A stretch of DNA of 64,000 bases, taken from positions 186,001-250,000 of IMG/VR virus record IMGVR_UViG_3300033049_000066; one strand, given 5' to 3'. The translations under genes and the position numbers were made by a program. The notes under the pieces are model-generated. The model saw nothing but the letters and a program-made list of their open reading frames with translations. It made no database searches and was not told where the DNA came from. Below are positions 2,232 through 57,739 of the stretch, piece after piece; the stretch's first letter is position 1; every line of letters begins with the position of its first letter.

Positions 2232-3095
2232 ATGCAAGAAATAATCATAACTGTTGGACTTCCAGCAAGTGGCAAGACAATGTGGACAAACGAGTGGATT
2301 GATACTCACCCCGAGTACGTGAATGTGAATCGTGATGACATCCGGCTTGCGCTGCAGGGGCGGAAACGCTACAATAAATTTTCTAAGTGGCGTGAGAACG
2401 CTGTATCTGCGATTGCGCTAGAGACTGTACACATCGCGCTTAGATATGGAAAATCTGTGATTCTGTCAGACACGAATCTGAACCCCGGCAGGAACGCCAA
2501 CTGGAAGAAGTTTGCGAAGAGTGAAGGGGTCGGGTATCGCGAAGAATTATTTACAGACGTTCATCTTGGCGTCTGCCTCGATCGTGACGCTCGGCGTGAA
2601 TTTCCTGTGGGGCAGCGTGTCATCACTGGCATGTTCGAGAGAGGCCGTGGCGTTTGGTTCCCAGAGATTCCAGTGTACGATAACATGCTCCCGGACTGTT
2701 ACCTGTGTGACATCGACGGTACAATAGCACAGATGAACGGTCGTGGTCCGTATGAATGGATGAAGGTTGATACTGACCTGCCCAAGAAAAATATAATATC
2801 CGTCGTGAATGCCCTCGCTCTGCACTCACAGATAATTATGCTTAGCGGTCGTGACGGTAGCTGCAAGGATCTCTCGGTGGCGTGGATGCAGGATAATGGC
2901 GTTAATTATCATGATTTTTTCATACGCCCAGCAGGCGATTCTCGCAAGGATACCCTGATTAAGGAAGAAATATACAATCAACATATCAAAGGTAAGTATA
3001 ATGTACTCGGTGTGTTTGACGATCGTGACCAAGTTGTACACATGTGGAGACACCTGGGGCTAGATGTCTTCCAAGTAAATTATGGAGCATTTTAA
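2232..3095 (+). CDS. pseT: polynucleotide 5'-kinase / 3'-phosphatase (Pnkp)
   Basis: P-loop GLPASGKT, NRDDIR, HAD motif DIDGTIA, SGR, RKD and FDDR; start taken at ATG 2232. Confidence 0.93.
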   Translation: MQEIIITVGLPASGKTMWTNEWIDTHPEYVNVNRDDIRLALQGRKRYNKFSKWRENAVSAIALETVHIALRYGKSVILSDTNLNPGRNANWKKFAKSEGVGYREELFTDVHLGVCLDRDARREFPVGQRVITGMFERGRGVWFPEIPVYDNMLPDCYLCDIDGTIAQMNGRGPYEWMKVDTDLPKKNIISVVNALALHSQIIMLSGRDGSCKDLSVAWMQDNGVNYHDFFIRPAGDSRKDTLIKEEIYNQHIKGKYNVLGVFDDRDQVVHMWRHLGLDVFQVNYGAF

Positions 3096-49452: not shown

Positions 49453-50250
49453 ATGAACGAAAAAACAATACATTTTATCGCTGGTTTACCACGTGCAGGT
49501 AGTACGCTACTCTGTAACATTTTAAATCAAAATCCAAGATTTCATGCTACAAGCACCTCGGGCATTTTAGACATTGTACTCGCTATACGCAACCAATGGG
49601 AAAATGTTAACGAATTCCAAGCAACTCCAAATAAGCTCGGAAAAGACGCAGTAATGAAACCAATTTTACAAAATTACTATTCAACAGTCGAGAGGCCGGT
49701 TGTATTTGACAAGTCGAGAGGATGGCCCGGGTATTTAGAACTTGCTGAACATTGTCTAGGCACAAAAGTCAAGATGATTGTCCCGGTTCGTAGAGTCGTA
49801 GATATTCTCGCTTCGTTTGAAAAATTAACAAGAAACAATTCACGGACTTGGCAAATGCCGCAAGAGAAATCACACTTCTTTGAGATGCAGACGCTCGCTG
49901 GTAGGGCAGATGTTTGGATGAGAAACGATCAGCCTGTGGGCATTGCCTACAATCGCGTAAGAGATGCGATAGACAGGGGCTTTGGCGAACAACTACATTT
50001 TGTGGAATTTGAAAATTTAACCGCGCATCCTGAGGCTACAATGGCTGCTTTGTACGAGTTTCTCGGTGAGGTGTATTTTGCGCATGATTTTTTAAATGTT
50101 GAGCAAAGCACAAATGAGAACGATGACGTCCATGGTATCCCTGGACTCCACACGATCCGACAGGTAGTGAAGCCGTTTGACGTAGATGCTAAGAAAATCA
50201 TCGGAGCGGATGCTTACAAGAAATACGAAAATGCGGAATTTTGGAGATAG
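49453..50250 (+). CDS. PAPS-dependent sulfotransferase
   Basis: FIAGLPRAGSTLL 5'-PSB loop, FDKSR, VR...DILAS, VEFENL...PE..M..LYEFLG. Confidence 0.85.
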   Translation: MNEKTIHFIAGLPRAGSTLLCNILNQNPRFHATSTSGILDIVLAIRNQWENVNEFQATPNKLGKDAVMKPILQNYYSTVERPVVFDKSRGWPGYLELAEHCLGTKVKMIVPVRRVVDILASFEKLTRNNSRTWQMPQEKSHFFEMQTLAGRADVWMRNDQPVGIAYNRVRDAIDRGFGEQLHFVEFENLTAHPEATMAALYEFLGEVYFAHDFLNVEQSTNENDDVHGIPGLHTIRQVVKPFDVDAKKIIGADAYKKYENAEFWR

Positions 50251-50254
50251 ATAA

Positions 50255-53218
50255 TTGATTAAAATTAAAAGTTTGGTTGTAAAAAACTTTATGAGTATCG
50301 GAAACGCAAGTCAAGCCGTGGACTTTGACCGTGATGACTTGACCCTCGTTCTTGGGGAGAATCTTGATCTTGGGAGCAATGGTGCGAGAAATGGTACCGG
50401 GAAGGCGCAACCGTTGTACTCAAAAATAAAAACACCCGGTGGCTGGGCTACAATGGGCGATATGGTCGTTGGGCAAGCCATCACCACACCTACCGGGGGC
50501 AGTGCTGAGGTCAGTGGCGTTTTCCCACAGGGTGAGGTAGAAACATACAGAATTCATTTTTCTGATGGTAGGCAAACAGATGCTTGCAAAGACCATCTGT
50601 GGAAAGTTTACTCGCACTCGTTTAAAGATAAATGGCAGGTTCTAACTACTGCTGAGTTAATTTCGCATACAGAAAAATATAAAAATCATAAAAATAAATC
50701 TACGTACTACAAATATGTTCCGTTGATTATCCCAGAAAATATTGCAGACATTAAGTTGCCATTTGATCCATATTTCCTTGGCGCGATGCTCGGAGACGGT
50801 GGCATGACCGTACACGGTATCGGGTTTACAACTGCTGATGACGAAATGTTTGAAAATATGAAACAGGTTCTGCCAGAAAATTATCAGATAACAAAAAATC
50901 ATTATGATGACTACGGATATTCATTAAAATTTATTAATCGAAAAAAGTACAGCACATTACGACTAGGATTATCTGCGCTGAAGTTATACGGAACGAAATC
51001 AGCAACGAAATTTATTCCAGAAATATATAAAAATGCCTCCATTAATCAAAAAATAGAACTTATACAAGGGATAGTAGACACCGACGGTTATGTCGCAAAG
51101 AAAAACGGGTCACTTTCTATTACAACCGTCAGCAAGCAAATGGCGGATGATATTCAAGAAATAATACAGTCTATTGGCGGGATCGCTAAAATAAAAATTA
51201 AAACGAACTGTGGGTATAAAAAAGACGGCATATTTATACCATGTCAGGACGCCTACACCGTTTGCATCACATACCATACTCCAAAACTTTTAGCTCGACT
51301 TAGCCGGAAAAAAGATCTCTTACCGGGTGAGAATTATCAGTACAAAAATAGAAAATTAAGAATCGATCATATAGAATATATTGGTAAGATTGAATCCCAA
51401 TGTATTATGGTCGAACACTCAGATCACTTATACATTACAGACAATTATATTGTTACACATAATACGACGTTGATAAACGCTCTGAGCTATGGGCTGTACG
51501 GCAGTGCGCTTTCTGAGATTCGCGTGAACAATCTTGTCAACAAAACTAACAGAAAAAATATGCTCGTGTCGGTTGAGTTCAGCATCGACGAGGCGCAGTA
51601 CAGAATTGAAAGGGGCAGATCTCCAAATGTGCTGAAATTTTACAAAAATGATCTTGAGCAGAAGGATGAGGATGGTGCGCAGGGCGAGAACAGGGAAACG
51701 CAAAAAGAGATAAATGATCTACTGGGGCTGAGTCACGCGATGTTCAAACACGCTGTCGCGCTAAACACCTACACCACCCCGTTTCTGTCTCTCAAGAATG
51801 CTGACCAGAAAGATATTATCGAGGAGCTTCTCGGAATCACTGTCCTTACCGAGAAGGCCGAGGCACTGAAAGCGGTCAACAAGATCACAAAGGATGGGGT
51901 CAAGGAAGAAGAATTCCGGCTTGAGACTATCATGAAGGCGAATCTGCGAATTGACGAACAGATTGAGGGGTTGAAGCGCCGGCAGCGGATGTGGCAGATC
52001 TCCCACAATAACACAGTAGATGGTTATACTTCAAAGATTGAAAAATTGATGGTGGTCGACATCGAAGACGAGATTGCTAAGCATAACCGCAATGCGAAAA
52101 TCCGGGTTGATACTGACAAGAAAAACACCAAGGGCAAAGCAGCAGTTGACAAATTTAACGCTGAACTAAAAATTCAAAAGGATCGTGAGATTGCCGCCAT
52201 TGACAAATTCAACTCTGCTGTGCTAGAATGTAATCGGTGGATCAAACAAATTGAAAATGATACAAAGGCCCAGGAGCGTCGGTCGCAAGCGTTACAAAGA
52301 GATATTGATTTACTAGAAGATCACAAGTGCCACGCCTGCGGGCAGGATCTCCATGATGAGACACAGGAAGCAAATATTGCGGCTAAGAAAACAGAATTAA
52401 CAGAATGTGCAATGCAGATTCTATCTAATCAAACGCAGGATACAGAGCAGAAACTAAAACTTGCGGACCTTGGCTCACCGCCGGTAACAAAAGAAGCTAA
52501 GAAAGCCAAAACGTTCAAAGAAGAGCAGTACAAGGGCAACCTCACTTTTTACAAAACCATCGACGAGGCTCACGGACACAAGAGCTCGCTCGCTACGCTC
52601 ACATCGCAGCTTGAAACCGCTGTAGACACTGCTGATCCGTACGTTGAACAAGTAGACGAAATGGTTGCTAGTGGGCTAGTTGAGGTCTCTTACGAATCTT
52701 TAAATCAGCTTGTCGAGCTACAAGAGCATCAGGCATTTCTACTAAAACTTTTAACGAGCAAAGATAGTTTCATTCGCAAGAAAATCATTGAGCAAAATTT
52801 AGCGTACTTGAATGGGCGGCTTACATATTACCTCACTGAAATCGGGCTTCCGCATCGTGTGCGGTTCATGTCGGATCTTAGCGTTGAGATTACAGACTTG
52901 GGCAGAGACCTGGACTTTGACAATTTGTCACGGGGTGAGAGGACTAGGCTGATTTTGTCTCTGTCTTGGGCGTTTAGGGATGTCTGGGAAAGTCTGTACA
53001 GCCACATCAACTTACTTTTTGTAGACGAGCTTGTCGACAATGGACTTGACACAAATGGCGTCGAAGCCGCTATTAAAATTATGAAAAGTATGGCGAGGGA
53101 GCGTGGGAAAAGTGTTTGGCTGGTCTCGCACAGAGAAGAATTAATTAGCCGCGTGAATAACACAATGAAAGTGATTAAGAGCGGTGGCTACACTGAATAC
53201 AGTAGCGAATTAGAATAG
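50255..53218 (+). CDS. gp46: recombination ATPase (gp46/Rad50/SbcC-like, intein-containing)
   Basis: KNFMSIG, Walker A NGTGK/TT split by the intein, CHAC zinc hook, LSRGE, LFVDE, LVSH. Confidence 0.95.
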   Translation: MIKIKSLVVKNFMSIGNASQAVDFDRDDLTLVLGENLDLGSNGARNGTGKAQPLYSKIKTPGGWATMGDMVVGQAITTPTGGSAEVSGVFPQGEVETYRIHFSDGRQTDACKDHLWKVYSHSFKDKWQVLTTAELISHTEKYKNHKNKSTYYKYVPLIIPENIADIKLPFDPYFLGAMLGDGGMTVHGIGFTTADDEMFENMKQVLPENYQITKNHYDDYGYSLKFINRKKYSTLRLGLSALKLYGTKSATKFIPEIYKNASINQKIELIQGIVDTDGYVAKKNGSLSITTVSKQMADDIQEIIQSIGGIAKIKIKTNCGYKKDGIFIPCQDAYTVCITYHTPKLLARLSRKKDLLPGENYQYKNRKLRIDHIEYIGKIESQCIMVEHSDHLYITDNYIVTHNTTLINALSYGLYGSALSEIRVNNLVNKTNRKNMLVSVEFSIDEAQYRIERGRSPNVLKFYKNDLEQKDEDGAQGENRETQKEINDLLGLSHAMFKHAVALNTYTTPFLSLKNADQKDIIEELLGITVLTEKAEALKAVNKITKDGVKEEEFRLETIMKANLRIDEQIEGLKRRQRMWQISHNNTVDGYTSKIEKLMVVDIEDEIAKHNRNAKIRVDTDKKNTKGKAAVDKFNAELKIQKDREIAAIDKFNSAVLECNRWIKQIENDTKAQERRSQALQRDIDLLEDHKCHACGQDLHDETQEANIAAKKTELTECAMQILSNQTQDTEQKLKLADLGSPPVTKEAKKAKTFKEEQYKGNLTFYKTIDEAHGHKSSLATLTSQLETAVDTADPYVEQVDEMVASGLVEVSYESLNQLVELQEHQAFLLKLLTSKDSFIRKKIIEQNLAYLNGRLTYYLTEIGLPHRVRFMSDLSVEITDLGRDLDFDNLSRGERTRLILSLSWAFRDVWESLYSHINLLFVDELVDNGLDTNGVEAAIKIMKSMARERGKSVWLVSHREELISRVNNTMKVIKSGGYTEYSSELE
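50405..51463 (+). mobile_element. Ala-start class-3 intein with LAGLIDADG endonuclease (353 aa)
   Basis: Ala1 (AQPLYSKIKTPGGW), DHLW, SQCIMV, IVTHN then +1 Thr; FLGAMLGDG and IQGIVDTDG. Confidence 0.92.
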
Positions 53219-54591: not shown

Positions 54592-54828
54592 CTAAAAAAA
54601 CGGAAGGCCGGATTTTTGCGTGGTTTCGAGATTATCCTCTGCGATCTTTGTAATTAGCTTTCGTTCTGCCGAACTTAAATTCATTGCGGTGTCGTACTGA
54701 ATACCCCCACGCATAGCCCATGCATGATGTAAGCATTCTTTTCGTATAGCGAGGGATTCTTTTTCTAGTTGATCAACGAACTTGGATATTTGCTCAGAGT
54801 TTAAGATTGTTAGCTTTGATCGAAAAAA
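54592..54828 (-). CDS. gp51-like baseplate hub assembly chaperone, probably expressed as a -1 frameshift extension
   Basis: W.MRGG..Y..AM.LS..ER motif; no good start codon of its own; frame reached by a -1 slip at 54822-54828. Confidence 0.7.
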   Translation of the reverse strand, partial: FFRSKLTILNSEQISKFVDQLEKESLAIRKECLHHAWAMRGGIQYDTAMNLSSAERKLITKIAEDNLETTQKSGLPFF

Positions 54829-55712
54829 GATGTCATGTCTAACGTAAAGTGCTGATCGTACGTATGATTGCAAACATGTGTATTTGGCTTAGTATCTTTG
54901 GCGCCTTCTTCATCATTATCTAGTACTTCATCTTTGATTAGCTCGGTACATTTAATTTTTAGAGGCTTAAGAATTTCTTTAGTCTTTTGTTCAATGACTG
55001 AGGCTTTGATCTTTTTGTACATAGAAGTTTCACAATTCTTTAAAAATTCTAATATATGTTCTTCTTTACTAACTGTACACTCTGGTGTTGTAATTGAGGC
55101 TATATTCTTCGCGAGCGTAGTGAGTGTGTACTCTGATACTTTTTTGAACGTGTCAGAGAGTAATTTAATTTGATCTTCTTCTTTTAGTGTAGAATCAACC
55201 AATAAGTGACTCAGCTTCTGCTCTTCAAACTGTAATTTATTGTTTTCGTTTAAATCTTTGTAAGTCATTGGCTTAAATGCGATAGTTAAATCACCTATAA
55301 CCATCACTTTACTGTAGTCAGTTGGTACAATTGAGTCAAGAACCACTCGTAAATCGACGTTGTACCCAGCAACATTAGCACAACTTGGGCATTTGGTTTC
55401 AATTTCCATATCATGGCCGAAGCTAGCGATTCTAATCGCGCACAGTACGGCGGTTAAGTCCGTTACCGGCATCGTCCAAGCATCTTTAATGGAAGGAATA
55501 CAGCTTTCTATAACCTGTACGACCGCTGATCCATTGAACAAAGCGTCCGGGGTTTTATACGTTATCTCGTCAATCGCCGTCATGGGTAAAACCGGCACTT
55601 CACCAGTCTCAGGTAGATCAAGTTTTCCATCACCGTAACCTTCACCCTTGCTTGGTAATGCTAAGTGAATAGAGGCGGTTCTAAAGTACTGCGATAAAGG
55701 ATTTTCGCTCAT
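54810..55712 (-). CDS. gp26-like baseplate hub / tail assembly chaperone
   Basis: LPS.G..Y, MTAIDEI..KTPDALFNG, CIPSI, AIRIASFG, CPSC. Confidence 0.8.
   Translation of the reverse strand: MSENPLSQYFRTASIHLALPSKGEGYGDGKLDLPETGEVPVLPMTAIDEITYKTPDALFNGSAVVQVIESCIPSIKDAWTMPVTDLTAVLCAIRIASFGHDMEIETKCPSCANVAGYNVDLRVVLDSIVPTDYSKVMVIGDLTIAFKPMTYKDLNENNKLQFEEQKLSHLLVDSTLKEEDQIKLLSDTFKKVSEYTLTTLAKNIASITTPECTVSKEEHILEFLKNCETSMYKKIKASVIEQKTKEILKPLKIKCTELIKDEVLDNDEEGAKDTKPNTHVCNHTYDQHFTLDMTSFFDQS
54822..54828 (-). promoter_or_regulatory. slippery heptamer U_UUU_UUC (-1 ribosomal frameshift)
   Basis: mRNA ...UCU UUU UUC GAU CAA AGC UAA, in the X_XXY_YYZ register. Confidence 0.6.
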
Positions 55713-55789: not shown

Positions 55790-57739
55790 ATGGCAGACGA
55801 AACGCAAGAAGAAATTGAACAACGAGAAAAGATGGTTGAGGTTTTGCTTGAGCAGATTCGCGCTGGTGAAAAAAGCATTGACGCAACATTAAAACGGTAC
55901 TTAGCGGAAACCAAAACCGGTAAGGCCATTAGCGAAACTCACACTGCAACTACGAAACTTACTAAAGGATTCACGAGCTCAGCACAAGCACTTGCAGGCA
56001 GTACCGGCAATCTCAACGATCTCTCGTCAGTCGTCAGCGGGACCATTGGAGCGATTACAGGATTGCTAGGATCCATTCCGCTAGTCGGGCCGGTCATTGA
56101 GAAATTTGGTGATGTTGCTGCCGAGACAATGACATTTGCGATGGGGCAAATTCAAGCAGGATTTTCATCGTTTCAAGAACTGTCAAAAGTAGGATTAATC
56201 GGCGCAAATGGCATCGACGGAATGTCACAGGCAATGCGAGACAGCAACATACCACTCGCGACCTTTTCAAAATTGCTAACCACTAGCTCACAGGACTTAG
56301 GGTTCTTGTCATCATCCGCACTAGCCGGCAGCAAGAAATTTAGCAAATCGTTAGCGATTATGTCCGACGATGCTGGCAAACCACTACGTAGATTAGGGTT
56401 AAGCGTTGAAGAGATAGGCGAAACAATCATTGACTTCCAGGTGATGCAACGACGTCAAGGAATCCTCGGGCAGTTGAGCCAAGACCAGATAAAGAAAGGT
56501 ACTGAAGAATACGCAAAAGAATTAGACTTAATCGCAAAATTAACTGGTAAGTCCAGAGCAGATGTACAGAAAGAACGCGAAGCAGCAATGAGTGATTCAC
56601 GCTTTCGTGCTTCAACAGCTGAGATGGATAATAAAACACGCCAGAAGCACATGGACGTATTAGCACTGATGACCGACCCAGCGCAGAAACGTGCGTACAT
56701 GGATAACGTCTCGGGCTTTACTAACACCGCAGCGGCCATACAGCAAGAAATCAATGGCATGGGCTCAACAATTCGGAAAGTAATTGATGATATCAACGGA
56801 GGGGGTAGCGCAAAAGATGCCTTCAATGCTATAATTTTACAGTCACGAGAAGTAACTAAAGTCGGCGGAATGCTCCACCAGATGGCAAAAGTCATGGAAT
56901 CTGATGGAAACCCGTTTGGTAGCTATGCTGATGCTGCCGACATGGGAGCAAGGGAATTAGTCACCACAGCTGATATTCTTAAGGCTCGCAATAAACTAAT
57001 GGATACCGAGGGAACAAAAACTGATAAGATAGTTACGTCAATGATGGAATTACAAGAATCCACCGCCGCATTAAATAATTTGTTCATCGGAACTGACGGA
57101 GCCATTGAGGTAATATCAATGTTTAGCAGCGTAATGCACAAGACAATCAAGTTCATTGAAGGCGAACTATTAGACAAGAGGAGTTTTACTGAAAAAACTG
57201 GCGAATGGTTCTCCGATTTCACTAGTGGGACCACAGTCGATAGCGTAATTAGTACAATGTCAAACCAGATAAATTCTGCCCTCGGCACTAATGATAGTCT
57301 AGGCAAGTATGTCGGCGGTAAAGTGCACGATGCGTTTGGTGACAAACCAAAATTTGCGAATGCGCCAGCCCGGGATTTCGAGTACGTTAACGGAGTTCCT
57401 GAATTCGCATCCCGCAGCCAAGGTGCCACCCCGTCTCCAATAACGCCGCAGGTAGCCCAAGTTGCCGCAGCAAGATCAACCCCACAAGTTGATCCAATTG
57501 CCCTTCAACGCAGAATCCTAGCAAAAGAAAAAGAACTCGACGCTGGACTGAGTAAATTTAGAATTAAAGCTGAATCCGATCTTTCAAAATCATTAAATGC
57601 GGATGAAAGAGCAGGCGGCCGAGAAATGATGTCAGAGCTAATGCAAATTCGTAACGAATTGAAGAAATTAAATAACACCGCAACGAAGCAAAATCAAGGC
57701 ATTGCAAATGTTGATAATTCGATTAAACGGGCCAGTTAA
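55790..57739 (+). CDS. tape-measure-like protein
   Basis: 649 aa, helical, Ala/Gly/Ser-rich; next to the hub chaperone genes and the portal. Confidence 0.6.
   Translation: MADETQEEIEQREKMVEVLLEQIRAGEKSIDATLKRYLAETKTGKAISETHTATTKLTKGFTSSAQALAGSTGNLNDLSSVVSGTIGAITGLLGSIPLVGPVIEKFGDVAAETMTFAMGQIQAGFSSFQELSKVGLIGANGIDGMSQAMRDSNIPLATFSKLLTTSSQDLGFLSSSALAGSKKFSKSLAIMSDDAGKPLRRLGLSVEEIGETIIDFQVMQRRQGILGQLSQDQIKKGTEEYAKELDLIAKLTGKSRADVQKEREAAMSDSRFRASTAEMDNKTRQKHMDVLALMTDPAQKRAYMDNVSGFTNTAAAIQQEINGMGSTIRKVIDDINGGGSAKDAFNAIILQSREVTKVGGMLHQMAKVMESDGNPFGSYADAADMGARELVTTADILKARNKLMDTEGTKTDKIVTSMMELQESTAALNNLFIGTDGAIEVISMFSSVMHKTIKFIEGELLDKRSFTEKTGEWFSDFTSGTTVDSVISTMSNQINSALGTNDSLGKYVGGKVHDAFGDKPKFANAPARDFEYVNGVPEFASRSQGATPSPITPQVAQVAAARSTPQVDPIALQRRILAKEKELDAGLSKFRIKAESDLSKSLNADERAGGREMMSELMQIRNELKKLNNTATKQNQGIANVDNSIKRAS

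What the first reader, a model, noticed from the sequence alone, without database searches (positions are those of the whole stretch)
54592..55712. Probable programmed -1 frameshift fusing gp26-like and gp51-like chaperones (G/GT-type recoding in a T4-like jumbo phage)
Seen: the 300-aa ORF ends ...ACA UCU UUU UUC GAU CAA AGC UAA, containing U_UUU_UUC (54828-54822) three codons before its stop. The -1 frame continues RSKLTILNSEQ... for 76 codons with a gp51-like motif and has no credible start (only a TTG without SD, and an ATG deep inside the domain). The predicted products are 300 aa and about 373 aa. Established: lambda G/GT-type tail chaperones use -1 slips next to the tape-measure gene, whereas T4 encodes gp26 and gp51 separately. 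Inference: the gp26/gp51 pair here is a recoded G/GT analogue lying beside the tape-measure-like gene.
Basis: partly seen in the sequence, partly recalled or inferred. Interest (0 to 1): 0.8.

Follow-up and report, generated by a model that had tools for sequence, protein, structure and literature searches.

The report
Frameshift joins phage gp26 and gp51
A marine giant phage almost certainly makes two tail-baseplate assembly proteins from one gene by letting a fraction of ribosomes slip back one base at U_UUU_UUC. The same signal sits in every relative examined, including cyanophages and KVP40, whereas phage T4 makes the two proteins (gp26 and gp51) from two separate genes.

Summary
The 300-aa ORF (54810..55712, minus strand) is a T4 gp26/gp51-family protein (Pfam PF12322). 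It ends TCT TTT TTC GAT CAA AGC TAA, and the -1 frame stays open for 76 more codons.

- **Signal conservation.** T_TTT_TTC lies in the same frame in 85 of 85 jumbo-phage loci and 57 of 57 unique cyanophage loci, and in KVP40, S-PM2, P-SSM2, RaK2, 121Q, Atu_ph07 and PA5oct. XacN1 and RsoM2USA have T_TTT_TTT. The preceding codon varies but always ends in T.
- **Frame switch.** Wobble-position variation moves from frame 0 to frame -1 exactly at the heptamer, upstream of the frame-0 stop.
- **No conserved start.** Most loci, including the window, have no start codon for the second ORF.
- **Identity of the extension.** It matches the C-terminal tail of T4 gp51, and gp26 and gp51 both match PF12322 over its full length.
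- **One gene or two.** Genomes with the heptamer have one PF12322 gene. T4 and one uncultured lineage lack the recoding and have a short and a long gene.

Best explanation: a programmed -1 ribosomal frameshift gives a 300-aa gp26-like and a 373-aa gp51-like product (confidence 0.85). The G/GT chaperone analogy is positional and functional, not shown by fold. I found no paper or GenBank annotation describing this.

The parts
54810..55712 (-). Frame-0 ORF, 300 aa: gp26/gp51-family (PF12322) core. It has two zinc-knuckle-like Cys pairs, and the second pair is split by a ~25-aa acidic insert. The frame-0 product ends ...LDMTSFFDQS.
   Evidence: Pfam PF12322 at E 1.4e-12, 48.2 bits against a 24.5-bit cut-off; phrog_150 'baseplate hub' at E 1.6e-15. 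AlphaFold model has pLDDT 81.7. It is the only PF12322 gene in the 293-kb record.
54822..54828 (-). Slippery heptamer U_UUU_UUC in X_XXY_YYZ phase, followed by G.
   Evidence: Read directly. Invariant TTTTTTCG in 67 unique related sequences. In frame in 85/85 and 57/57 loci. H_HH.U_UU.Y motifs are among the most efficient -1 motifs in E. coli (PMC4066793).
54595..54821 (-). -1 frame extension: 76 codons from CGA at 54822-54820 to TTT at 54597-54595. The first base, C54822, is shared with the heptamer. It encodes RSKLTILNSEQ...WAMRGG...SSAERKLI...GLPFF and corresponds to the gp51 C-terminal domain.
   Evidence: Conserved in all relatives with 12 invariant columns. Found in frame at the C-terminus of natural 319-351-aa proteins. 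hhalign to the gp51 C-terminus: 84%, E 7e-6. Predicted helical in the natural long form.
54592..54594 (-). Stop codon (TAG) of the trans-frame product.
54810..54812 (-). Stop codon (TAA) of the frame-0 product, 3 sense codons after the heptamer.
55790..57739 (+). Divergently transcribed 649-aa neighbour, a putative tape-measure/hub protein. Context only.
   Evidence: No Pfam, PHROG, PDB or tblastn match. Atlas features lean towards tape-measure clusters, score 0.93, a lead only. Syntenic with RaK2 ORF088 (annotated tape-measure-like) and CBB_251, a virion protein with 29 peptides.

Best explanation
One gene gives two proteins by programmed -1 ribosomal frameshifting.

**Mechanism.** Most ribosomes read the gp26-like ORF in frame 0 and stop three codons after U_UUU_UUC, giving a 300-aa protein. 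This protein is equivalent to T4 gp26, which also ends just after the FF motif. A minority slip back one base while the two Phe-tRNAs occupy UUU-UUC, re-pairing with UUU-UUU. They then read CGA (Arg) and 75 more codons, giving a 373-aa protein with the same first 297 residues plus a helical tail. That product is equivalent to T4 gp51.

**Function (inferred).** By analogy with T4, both products would be non-virion assembly factors for the baseplate hub and tail-tube initiation complex. The frameshift would fix their ratio, as lambda G/GT does.

**Shown here:**
- the signal and its conservation;
- selection on the -1 frame starting at the heptamer;
- homology of the two parts to gp26/gp51;
- the alternative two-gene solution in other phages.

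**Inferred, not shown:** that slippage occurs, how efficient it is, and what the products do in assembly.
For: 1. **Heptamer conservation.** T_TTT_TTC is in phase in 85/85 loci at 26-67% protein identity to the window ORF, in 57/57 unique cyanophage-type loci, and in Serratia BF, PA5oct, Vibrio 2.275.O, KVP40, S-PM2 and P-SSM2. XacN1 and RsoM2USA have T_TTT_TTT.
2. **Synonymous-site constraint.** The preceding codon takes at least eight forms (TCT, AGT, ACT, AAT, CAT, CGT, GAT, GCT) but always ends in T, and the first Phe codon is always TTT. Background frequencies in these genes are 0.45 and 0.63, so about 0.28 per independent lineage.
3. **Frame switch.** Wobble periodicity moves from frame 0 to frame -1 exactly at the heptamer, and the -1 motif R-x-(R/K)-L-L lies upstream of the frame-0 stop.
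4. **No conserved start.** The window's first ATG is 36 codons in. Most jumbo loci have none before +14, and only 30/57 cyanophage loci have Met at +3. Gene callers give the second ORF inconsistent starts.
5. **Natural fusions.** In-frame proteins of 319-351 aa carry the extension at the C-terminus with junction S-F-R-N-K-I-L. Those lineages have two tandem PF12322 genes, one short and one long.
6. **gp26 and gp51 are paralogues.** Both match PF12322 over its full length. gp26 ends ...EFFELL and gp51 continues ...[11 protein letters not shown].... The extension matches the gp51 tail.
7. **Copy number.** There is one PF12322 gene in the window's record, Atu_ph07, Phosso, 121Q, RaK2, PA5oct, SP-15, S-PM2, P-SSM2 and KVP40, and two in T4.
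8. **Natural control.** T4 gene 26 encodes FF as TTC TTT, which is not slippery.
9. **Population data.** The extension is under purifying selection in frame -1, and there is no homopolymer indel.
10. **Motif class.** It is efficient in E. coli and used by IS elements (PMC4066793).
Against: - No protein, ribosome-profiling or RNA data exist for this uncultured phage; only DNA metagenomes hold it.
- No convincing stimulatory RNA structure lies downstream in the window (z-score 0.24). The GCCUCC...GGAGGC pairing seen in many relatives is absent here and has only weak covariation support.
- Some relatives have an ATG at or next to the frame-0 stop, so reinitiation is possible there: Atu_ph07 and Phosso (ATGA), 121Q and KVP40 (TAATG), and about half of the cyanophages.
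- The C and G at the end of TTTTTTCG are also explained by dual coding (Phe in frame 0, Arg CGN in frame -1). Only two of the eight invariant positions are pure slip-site evidence.
- A T6 run could in principle support transcriptional slippage instead.
Confidence: 0.85

Rival explanations
1. There are two separate proteins. The second ORF is an independent 'mini-gp51' of about 55-76 aa, as GenBank annotates it in cyanophages and KVP40. It would be translated by termination-reinitiation or from a non-canonical start after the gp26-like ORF.
For: An ATG overlaps or abuts the frame-0 stop in Atu_ph07, Phosso, 121Q and KVP40, and about half of the cyanophage loci have Met at +3. Existing annotations treat it this way.
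Against: The window, RaK2 and most metagenomic loci have no start codon there. In 27/57 cyanophage loci the Met is replaced. -1-frame residues upstream of those ATGs (F-F-R-x) are conserved, and the periodicity switches at the heptamer rather than at the stop. This model does not explain the invariant T at two frame-0 synonymous sites. Homologues that lack the recoding carry the domain fused to a full core, never free.
Confidence: 0.07
2. The fused product is the same, but it arises by transcriptional slippage. RNA polymerase adds one U in the T6 run, so a subset of mRNAs encodes the long form in one frame.
For: The signal is a homopolymer. RsoM2USA has a T9 run and XacN1 a T7 run, lengths at which polymerase slippage is known to become appreciable (general knowledge). 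Selection for NNT before TTT TTC would also lengthen the run.
Against: Six Ts is shorter than the runs usually needed (general knowledge). The run is always in exact X_XXY_YYZ phase, which is the requirement for tandem tRNA slippage. The motif class is a proven ribosomal -1 site (PMC4066793). No RNA data are available to test this.
Confidence: 0.06
3. There is no recoding. The downstream frame is an open frame by chance, a decayed gene remnant, or a homopolymer sequencing error that splits one long gene.
For: Homopolymers are error-prone, and natural single-ORF long forms exist.
Against: The same split is found in about 140 unique loci from independent assemblies and in more than a dozen finished phage genomes. 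The extension is under purifying selection. An independent sample has the same T6. Natural long forms coexist with a separate short gene.
Confidence: 0.02

Closest known systems
Lambda G/GT-type tail assembly chaperones made by a conserved -1 frameshift (Xu, Hendrix & Duda 2004, Mol Cell 16:11; cited from the reference list of PMC9024508, and general knowledge)
   Same: A slippery heptamer lies near the 3' end of a tail-assembly gene. A short abundant product and a C-terminally extended minor product share their N-terminus. T4 gp26 and gp51 are proposed in the literature to be non-structural chaperones or cofactors (PMC9024508). In KVP40 the order is tube-like gene, then gp26, then the extension, then a large unknown protein. 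In Bacillus phage SP-15 it is sheath, tube, gp26-like, then tape measure, which is the classic G/GT slot.
   Different: The protein family is unrelated by sequence: PF12322, about 280 aa with Cys knuckles, against about 100-140-aa chaperones. Fold similarity is not established. In the window and the RaK2-like phages the gene is divergent from the putative tape measure gene, not directly upstream of it. The function concerns the T4-type baseplate hub.
T4 gp26 (baseplate hub subunit) and gp51 (baseplate hub assembly catalyst)
   Same: Same Pfam family. The frame-0 product stops where gp26 stops, just after the FF motif. The trans-frame product continues like gp51 (FF-R-x-K-L... against VF-K-L-L...; M-x-x-x-E-R motif).
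   Different: T4 uses two divergently transcribed paralogous genes and has no slippery site (TTC TTT). The window uses one gene plus recoding. Sequence identity to the T4 proteins is very low, with pairwise BLAST not significant.
'gp26' plus mini-'gp51' gene pairs annotated in cyanomyoviruses and KVP40 (GenBank NC_006820, NC_006883, NC_005083)
   Same: The arrangement is the same: a PF12322 ORF ending 9 nt after T_TTT_TTC, then a small ORF in frame -1 that matches only the C-terminus of T4 gp51.
   Different: Those records annotate two independent CDSs, and no ribosomal-slippage join is annotated. The window's extension is longer (76 against 57-64 aa) and only distantly similar to theirs.
Bacterial and IS-element -1 frameshift sites (dnaX, IS1/IS3 families)
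   Same: The motif has the X_XXY_YYZ form, and U_UU.U_UU.C is used by IS elements (PMC4066793).
   Different: The window has no recognisable upstream Shine-Dalgarno-like stimulator or downstream stem-loop or pseudoknot.

Membership tests
PF12322 T4_baseplate (gp26/gp51 family) | HMM match above the curated cut-off | tested here: met
   48.2 bits against a 24.5-bit cut-off, E 1.4e-12. phrog_150 at E 1.6e-15. T4 gp26 and gp51 both match the whole profile.
PF12322 T4_baseplate (gp26/gp51 family) | Shared predicted fold with annotated T4-like baseplate hub assembly proteins | tested here: met
   A model of the natural long form (pLDDT 91.4) matches BFVD 'baseplate hub assembly protein, T4-like' entries at E 1e-10 to 8e-17.
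gp51 C-terminal domain | Extension homologous and collinear with the last ~50 residues of T4 gp51 | tested here: met
   Jumbo-phage extension against gp51 C-terminus: hhalign 84%, E 7e-6. Natural long forms against gp51, full-length and collinear: 68%, E 5e-5. Cyanophage/KVP40 extension against gp51 C-terminus: 95.8%, E 8e-9. Support for the window's own clade is moderate, not overwhelming. Single sequences give no Pfam or PHROG hit.
Programmed -1 ribosomal frameshift site | X_XXY_YYZ heptamer in the frame-0 phase, with the -1 ORF open across it | tested here: met
Programmed -1 ribosomal frameshift site | Heptamer conserved beyond what the encoded amino acids require | tested here: met
   The two free synonymous sites are invariant in about 124 unique loci while the preceding amino acid varies. 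T4, which does not need the site, uses TTC TTT.
Programmed -1 ribosomal frameshift site | Stimulatory element: downstream structure or upstream SD-like sequence | tested here: not met
   Window downstream fold has z-score 0.24. The candidate GCCUCC:GGAGGC stem in relatives has 68-70% of cells paired and weak covariation, and is absent from the window. Stimulators modulate efficiency and are not obligatory (PMC4066793).
Programmed -1 ribosomal frameshift site | Trans-frame protein product observed | not testable with these tools
   Only DNA metagenome runs hold the sequence.
Lambda G/GT-type tail assembly chaperone pair | Located between the tail tube gene and the tape measure gene, co-directional | tested here: not met
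   In the window the gene is divergent from the 649-aa putative tape measure gene, with endonuclease VII downstream. The feature is met in the relative SP-15 and plausibly in KVP40.
Lambda G/GT-type tail assembly chaperone pair | Tail-assembly-chaperone fold or sequence family | tested here: inconclusive
   Foldseek against PDB gave no match. VIA wide search of the long-form model lists YqbN 3klu (Z 4.9) and the HK97 chaperone 2ob9 (Z 4.4), below the noise level. These were not reproduced with the window's own model.
Lambda G/GT-type tail assembly chaperone pair | Both products required for tail assembly and absent from virions | not testable with these tools
   Indirect only. The CBB virion mass-spectrometry table lists the neighbour CBB_251 but not CBB_250 or CBB_249. 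T4 gp26 and gp51 are described as proposed chaperones or cofactors (PMC9024508).

The most novel reading that the evidence does not exclude
The PF12322 proteins (T4 gp26/gp51) would be the G/GT equivalent that has not been recognised in T4-type myoviruses (from memory: T4-like phages have stood as an exception to the conserved tail-chaperone frameshift). On this reading, a short-plus-long chaperone pair made by a -1 frameshift at U_UUU_UUC is the ancestral and still dominant arrangement across cyanomyoviruses, KVP40-like phages and many jumbo phages. T4 itself and at least one other lineage would have replaced the frameshift by gene duplication, fixing each form in its own gene. The small 'gp51' CDSs annotated next to gp26 in cyanophage genomes would then be mis-annotated, since they are never made alone. 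The 'catalytic' low-dose role of T4 gp51 would correspond to that of lambda GT.
Probability: 0.5. Interest if true: 0.75.

Novelty: new member of a known kind. Interest (0 to 1): 0.66.

Why it matters
**A missing piece for T4-type phages.** Programmed frameshifts in tail-chaperone genes are a hallmark of long-tailed phages. From memory, T4-like phages have stood as an exception, and the roles of T4 gp26 and gp51 remain unclear; neither family has a solved structure by sequence search. These results give a specific, testable reading: gp26 and gp51 are the short and long forms of one ancestral recoded gene.

**Annotation.** The small 'gp51' or 'hypothetical' CDS downstream of gp26 in cyanophage, KVP40-like and jumbo-phage genomes should be a ribosomal-slippage join.

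**Evolution.** The data offer a clean natural example of gene duplication and recoding as interchangeable ways to set the ratio of two protein isoforms.

**Testability.** Several carriers are cultured model phages (KVP40, S-PM2, RaK2, 121Q, PA5oct), so the prediction can be tested directly.

Tried and rejected
- **Pairwise BLAST** of the window pieces against T4 gp26 and gp51 gave nothing significant. Profile methods were needed.
- **Single-sequence Pfam and PHROG scans** of the extension gave no hits.
- **Downstream RNA stimulator.** The window's fold is no better than shuffled sequence. Two candidate long-range stems in relatives have only weak covariation. I dropped this as part of the mechanism for the window.
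- **Tape measure identity of the 649-aa neighbour.** There was no Pfam, PHROG, PDB or tblastn hit, and no similarity to RaK2 ORF088 or T4 gp29. Only a feature-based Atlas lead remains. PHROG scans of the downstream large proteins of KVP40 and P-SSM2 were also uninformative.
- **Chaperone fold.** Foldseek against PDB found nothing. Weak VIA hits to two tail chaperones were not reproduced with the window's own model.
- **RNA evidence.** No RNA runs hold the sequence.
- **SP-15 +1-frame extension.** Homology is only suggestive (HMM E 4.3; hhalign 38%).
- **Bridging profile.** An attempt to join mini-gp51 and gp51 C-termini against the jumbo extension failed for a scripting reason and was not repeated.
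- **Literature.** Searches for gp26, gp51 or 'baseplate hub assembly catalyst' with 'frameshift' or 'tail assembly chaperone' found nothing relevant.
Full report
**1. The observation**

On the minus strand, the ORF 54810..55712 encodes 300 aa and ends ACA TCT TTT TTC GAT CAA AGC TAA. The heptamer T_TTT_TTC lies at 54828..54822 in X_XXY_YYZ phase, three sense codons before the stop.

The -1 frame is open from the heptamer for 76 further codons (RSKLTILNSEQ...GLPFF) to a TAG at 54594-54592. The predicted products are therefore 300 aa and 373 aa. In that frame the only start-like codons are a TTG 17 codons upstream of the slip site and ATGs 36 and 46 codons downstream, inside the conserved domain.

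**2. What the gene is**

- The 300-aa product belongs to Pfam PF12322 'T4_baseplate' (48.2 bits against a 24.5-bit cut-off) and to phrog_150 'baseplate hub'.
- The window lies in a 293-kb IMG/VR virus record from a seawater metagenome.
- Its neighbours are a T4-type portal, a 649-aa unknown protein, endonuclease VII and a gp46-like ATPase.
- The RaK2-like jumbo phages show the same synteny: portal, large structural protein, then divergently the gp26-like gene, a small ORF, endonuclease VII and gp46.

**3. Conservation of the signal**

I fetched 80 IMG/VR loci with 43-67% protein identity, plus Atu_ph07, Phosso, 121Q and RaK2 at 26-39% identity.

- All 85 loci, window included, carry T_TTT_TTC in the same phase, 9-24 nt before the frame-0 stop.
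- In an ungapped comparison of 67 unique sequences, TTTTTTCG is the only 8-nt invariant block.
- The codon before it encodes Ser, Thr, Asn, His or Arg through six different codons, yet always ends in T. The first Phe codon is always TTT.
- Background frequencies in the same genes are 0.45 for T-ending codons and 0.63 for TTT, or about 0.28 per independent lineage.
- The final C and G are explained by dual coding: Phe in frame 0 and Arg CGN in frame -1.
- Poorly conserved wobble positions fall on frame-0 third positions upstream of the heptamer and on frame -1 third positions from the heptamer onward. The switch therefore occurs before the frame-0 stop.
- The -1-frame peptide begins with a conserved R-x-(R/K)-L-L directly after the slip site.
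- Serratia BF, PA5oct and Vibrio 2.275.O have the same signal. XacN1 and RsoM2USA have T_TTT_TTT. The extension profile finds all five of their -1-frame pieces at E 4e-10 to 7e-8.

**4. No conserved start for the second ORF**

Most loci have no ATG in the -1 frame before codon +14 to +36. Only Atu_ph07, Phosso and 121Q have an ATG overlapping the stop. In the 1.8-billion-protein library the extension is called with many different, mutually inconsistent starts, giving products of 40-98 aa.

**5. Natural fusions and the two-gene alternative**

The same library search found about 25 clusters of 319-351-aa proteins in which the extension is the in-frame C-terminus of a PF12322 core, with junction ...S-F-R-N-K-I-L....

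Their contigs carry two tandem PF12322 genes: a short one ending a few residues after the FF/FL motif, then the long one.

T4 does the same with divergent genes:
- gp26 (208 aa) ends ...KEFFELL.
- gp51 (249 aa) continues ...[52 protein letters not shown].
- Both match PF12322 over its full length. In phrog_150, gp51 extends about 45 positions further than gp26.

Copy number follows the signal. The window's record, Atu_ph07, Phosso, 121Q, RaK2, PA5oct, SP-15, S-PM2, P-SSM2 and KVP40 each have one PF12322 gene, and T4 has two. T4 gene 26 encodes its FF as TTC TTT, which cannot slip.

**6. The extension is the gp51 tail**

| Comparison | hhalign result |
|---|---|
| Jumbo-phage extension vs gp51 C-terminus | 84%, E 7e-6, collinear |
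| Natural long forms vs gp51 family, end to end | 68%, E 5e-5 |
| Cyanophage/KVP40 extension vs gp51 C-terminus, starting at FFR = (V/I)FK | 95.8%, E 8e-9 |

S-PM2, P-SSM2 and KVP40 each have one PF12322 gene ending 9 nt after T_TTT_TTC_G. The -1 frame there is the small CDS labelled 'gp51' in the S-PM2 and P-SSM2 records, and 'baseplate hub assembly catalyst' in the KVP40 record. The KVP40 record notes similarity to 'a 40 amino acid stretch at the C-terminus of T4 ... gp51'.

In 57 of 57 unique cyanophage-type IMG/VR loci the heptamer is present in phase. The Met that those annotations use as a start is present in only 30 of them. The recoding is therefore not a peculiarity of the window. It spans cyanomyoviruses, KVP40 and many jumbo phages.

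**7. Population check**

A second seawater sample holds a variant strain. It has no indel in the T run, and eight of its nine substitutions within the extension fall on -1-frame third positions.

**8. Mechanism**

The best-supported model is tandem -1 slippage of the two Phe-tRNAs on U_UUU_UUC. H_HH.U_UU.Y motifs are among the most efficient in E. coli, and U_UU.U_UU.C is used by IS elements (PMC4066793).

I found no stimulatory structure in the window. Many relatives use the rare Leu codon CTC within a GCCUCC that could pair with a downstream GGAGGC, but the covariation support is weak. Efficiency is unknown.

Transcriptional slippage on the T run would give the same protein and cannot be excluded from sequence alone. 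Reinitiation is possible in the minority of phages with an ATG at the stop, but it does not explain the conserved features.

**9. Function and the G/GT analogy**

T4 gp26 and gp51 are regarded as possible non-structural chaperones or cofactors of hub assembly (PMC9024508). The CBB virion proteome lists the neighbour CBB_251 but not the gp26-like protein or the small ORF.

Gene order gives positional support for the analogy:
- In Bacillus phage SP-15 the gp26-like gene sits between the tail tube and tape measure genes, the classic G/GT slot.
- In KVP40 it follows a tube-like gene and precedes a 656-aa unknown protein.

Structural support is lacking. A high-confidence model of a natural long form (pLDDT 91.4) shows the extension as a helical unit. 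No solved structure matches by Foldseek. Weak VIA matches to two tail chaperones (Z 4.4-4.9) are below noise and were not reproduced with the window's own model. The statement 'works like G/GT' is therefore a reasoned analogy, and membership of that family is not shown. The tape measure identity of the 649-aa neighbour also remains a lead only.

**10. Novelty**

None of the GenBank records I inspected annotates a slippage join. Full-text searches combining gp26, gp51 or 'baseplate hub assembly catalyst' with 'frameshift' or 'tail assembly chaperone' found nothing relevant. The CBB and Atu_ph07 genome papers do not mention a frameshift. The library does not hold most subscription-journal papers, so prior description cannot be excluded.

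I rate this a new member of a known kind: a programmed -1 frameshift in a phage tail-assembly gene. It has a useful consequence, because it explains T4 gp26 and gp51 as the unrecoded, duplicated version of one recoded gene.

Noticed in passing
window 50255..53218 (+): The 987-aa gp46/SbcC-like ATPase ORF (TTG start) carries an intein-like insert. LAGLIDADG_3 and Hom_end homing-endonuclease domains lie at residues ~265-339, the SMC_N match resumes after residue ~484, and by eye there is a ...VTHN|T C-terminal splice-like motif.
   Followed up: partly
window 54855..54950 (-), residues ~255-281 of the 300-aa ORF: The window's gp26-like protein has a ~25-aa acidic insert (TELIKDEVLDNDEEGAKDTKPNTHV) between the two Cys of the second knuckle. 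Relatives have IKCxEC there. This explains its length of 300 aa against ~278. The variant strain in sample X2 has several non-synonymous changes in this stretch.
   Followed up: partly
L006-L084, positions +13..+19 after the heptamer start; paired candidates at about +68..+74 or +89..+96: Most relatives have GCCUCC just after the slip site and use the rarest Leu codon CTC (7% of Leu codons in these genes) in 90% of loci. It can pair with a downstream GGAGGC. This may be a stimulatory stem, but covariation is weak and the window lacks it.
   Followed up: partly
L095 (Bacillus phage SP-15) 1774..2733: The PF12322-like gene sits between the tail tube and tape measure genes. Its extension-like ORF (...SMAIFERKEMY...) is in the +1 frame, not the -1 frame, across GAA TTT TTT CAC. 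This suggests a +1 shift or a transcriptional deletion there. Homology of that piece is only suggestive.
   Followed up: partly
L093 (RsoM2USA) ~2262..2283; L094 (XacN1) ~2277..2290: These two jumbo phages have longer T runs, T9 and T7 (heptamer T_TTT_TTT). Transcriptional slippage could contribute in them.
   Followed up: no
L087 1268..1295; L088 2765..2789: In the lineage with separate short and long genes, the short gene still ends AAT TTT TTC (L087) or AAT TTT TTA (L088). The -1 frame closes after one to two codons. This looks like a vestige of an ancestral slip site.
   Followed up: no
window 54557: A second seawater sample holds a variant strain with a 6-nt deletion in the non-coding stretch just downstream of the extension's stop codon.
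   Followed up: no
window 49453..50250 (+): A 265-aa sulfotransferase-family protein (Sulfotransfer_3, E 3e-15) is encoded next to the recombination genes. This is an unusual auxiliary gene for a phage.
   Followed up: no
L105 2718..2891, L107 2691..2864, L106 2613..2780, L003 3337..3546, L090 2064..2243, L092 2043..2246: Public records annotate the -1 extension as a stand-alone CDS, labelled 'gp51', 'baseplate hub assembly catalyst' or 'hypothetical protein', with differing starts. RaK2, PA5oct and RsoM2USA leave it unannotated.
   Followed up: yes
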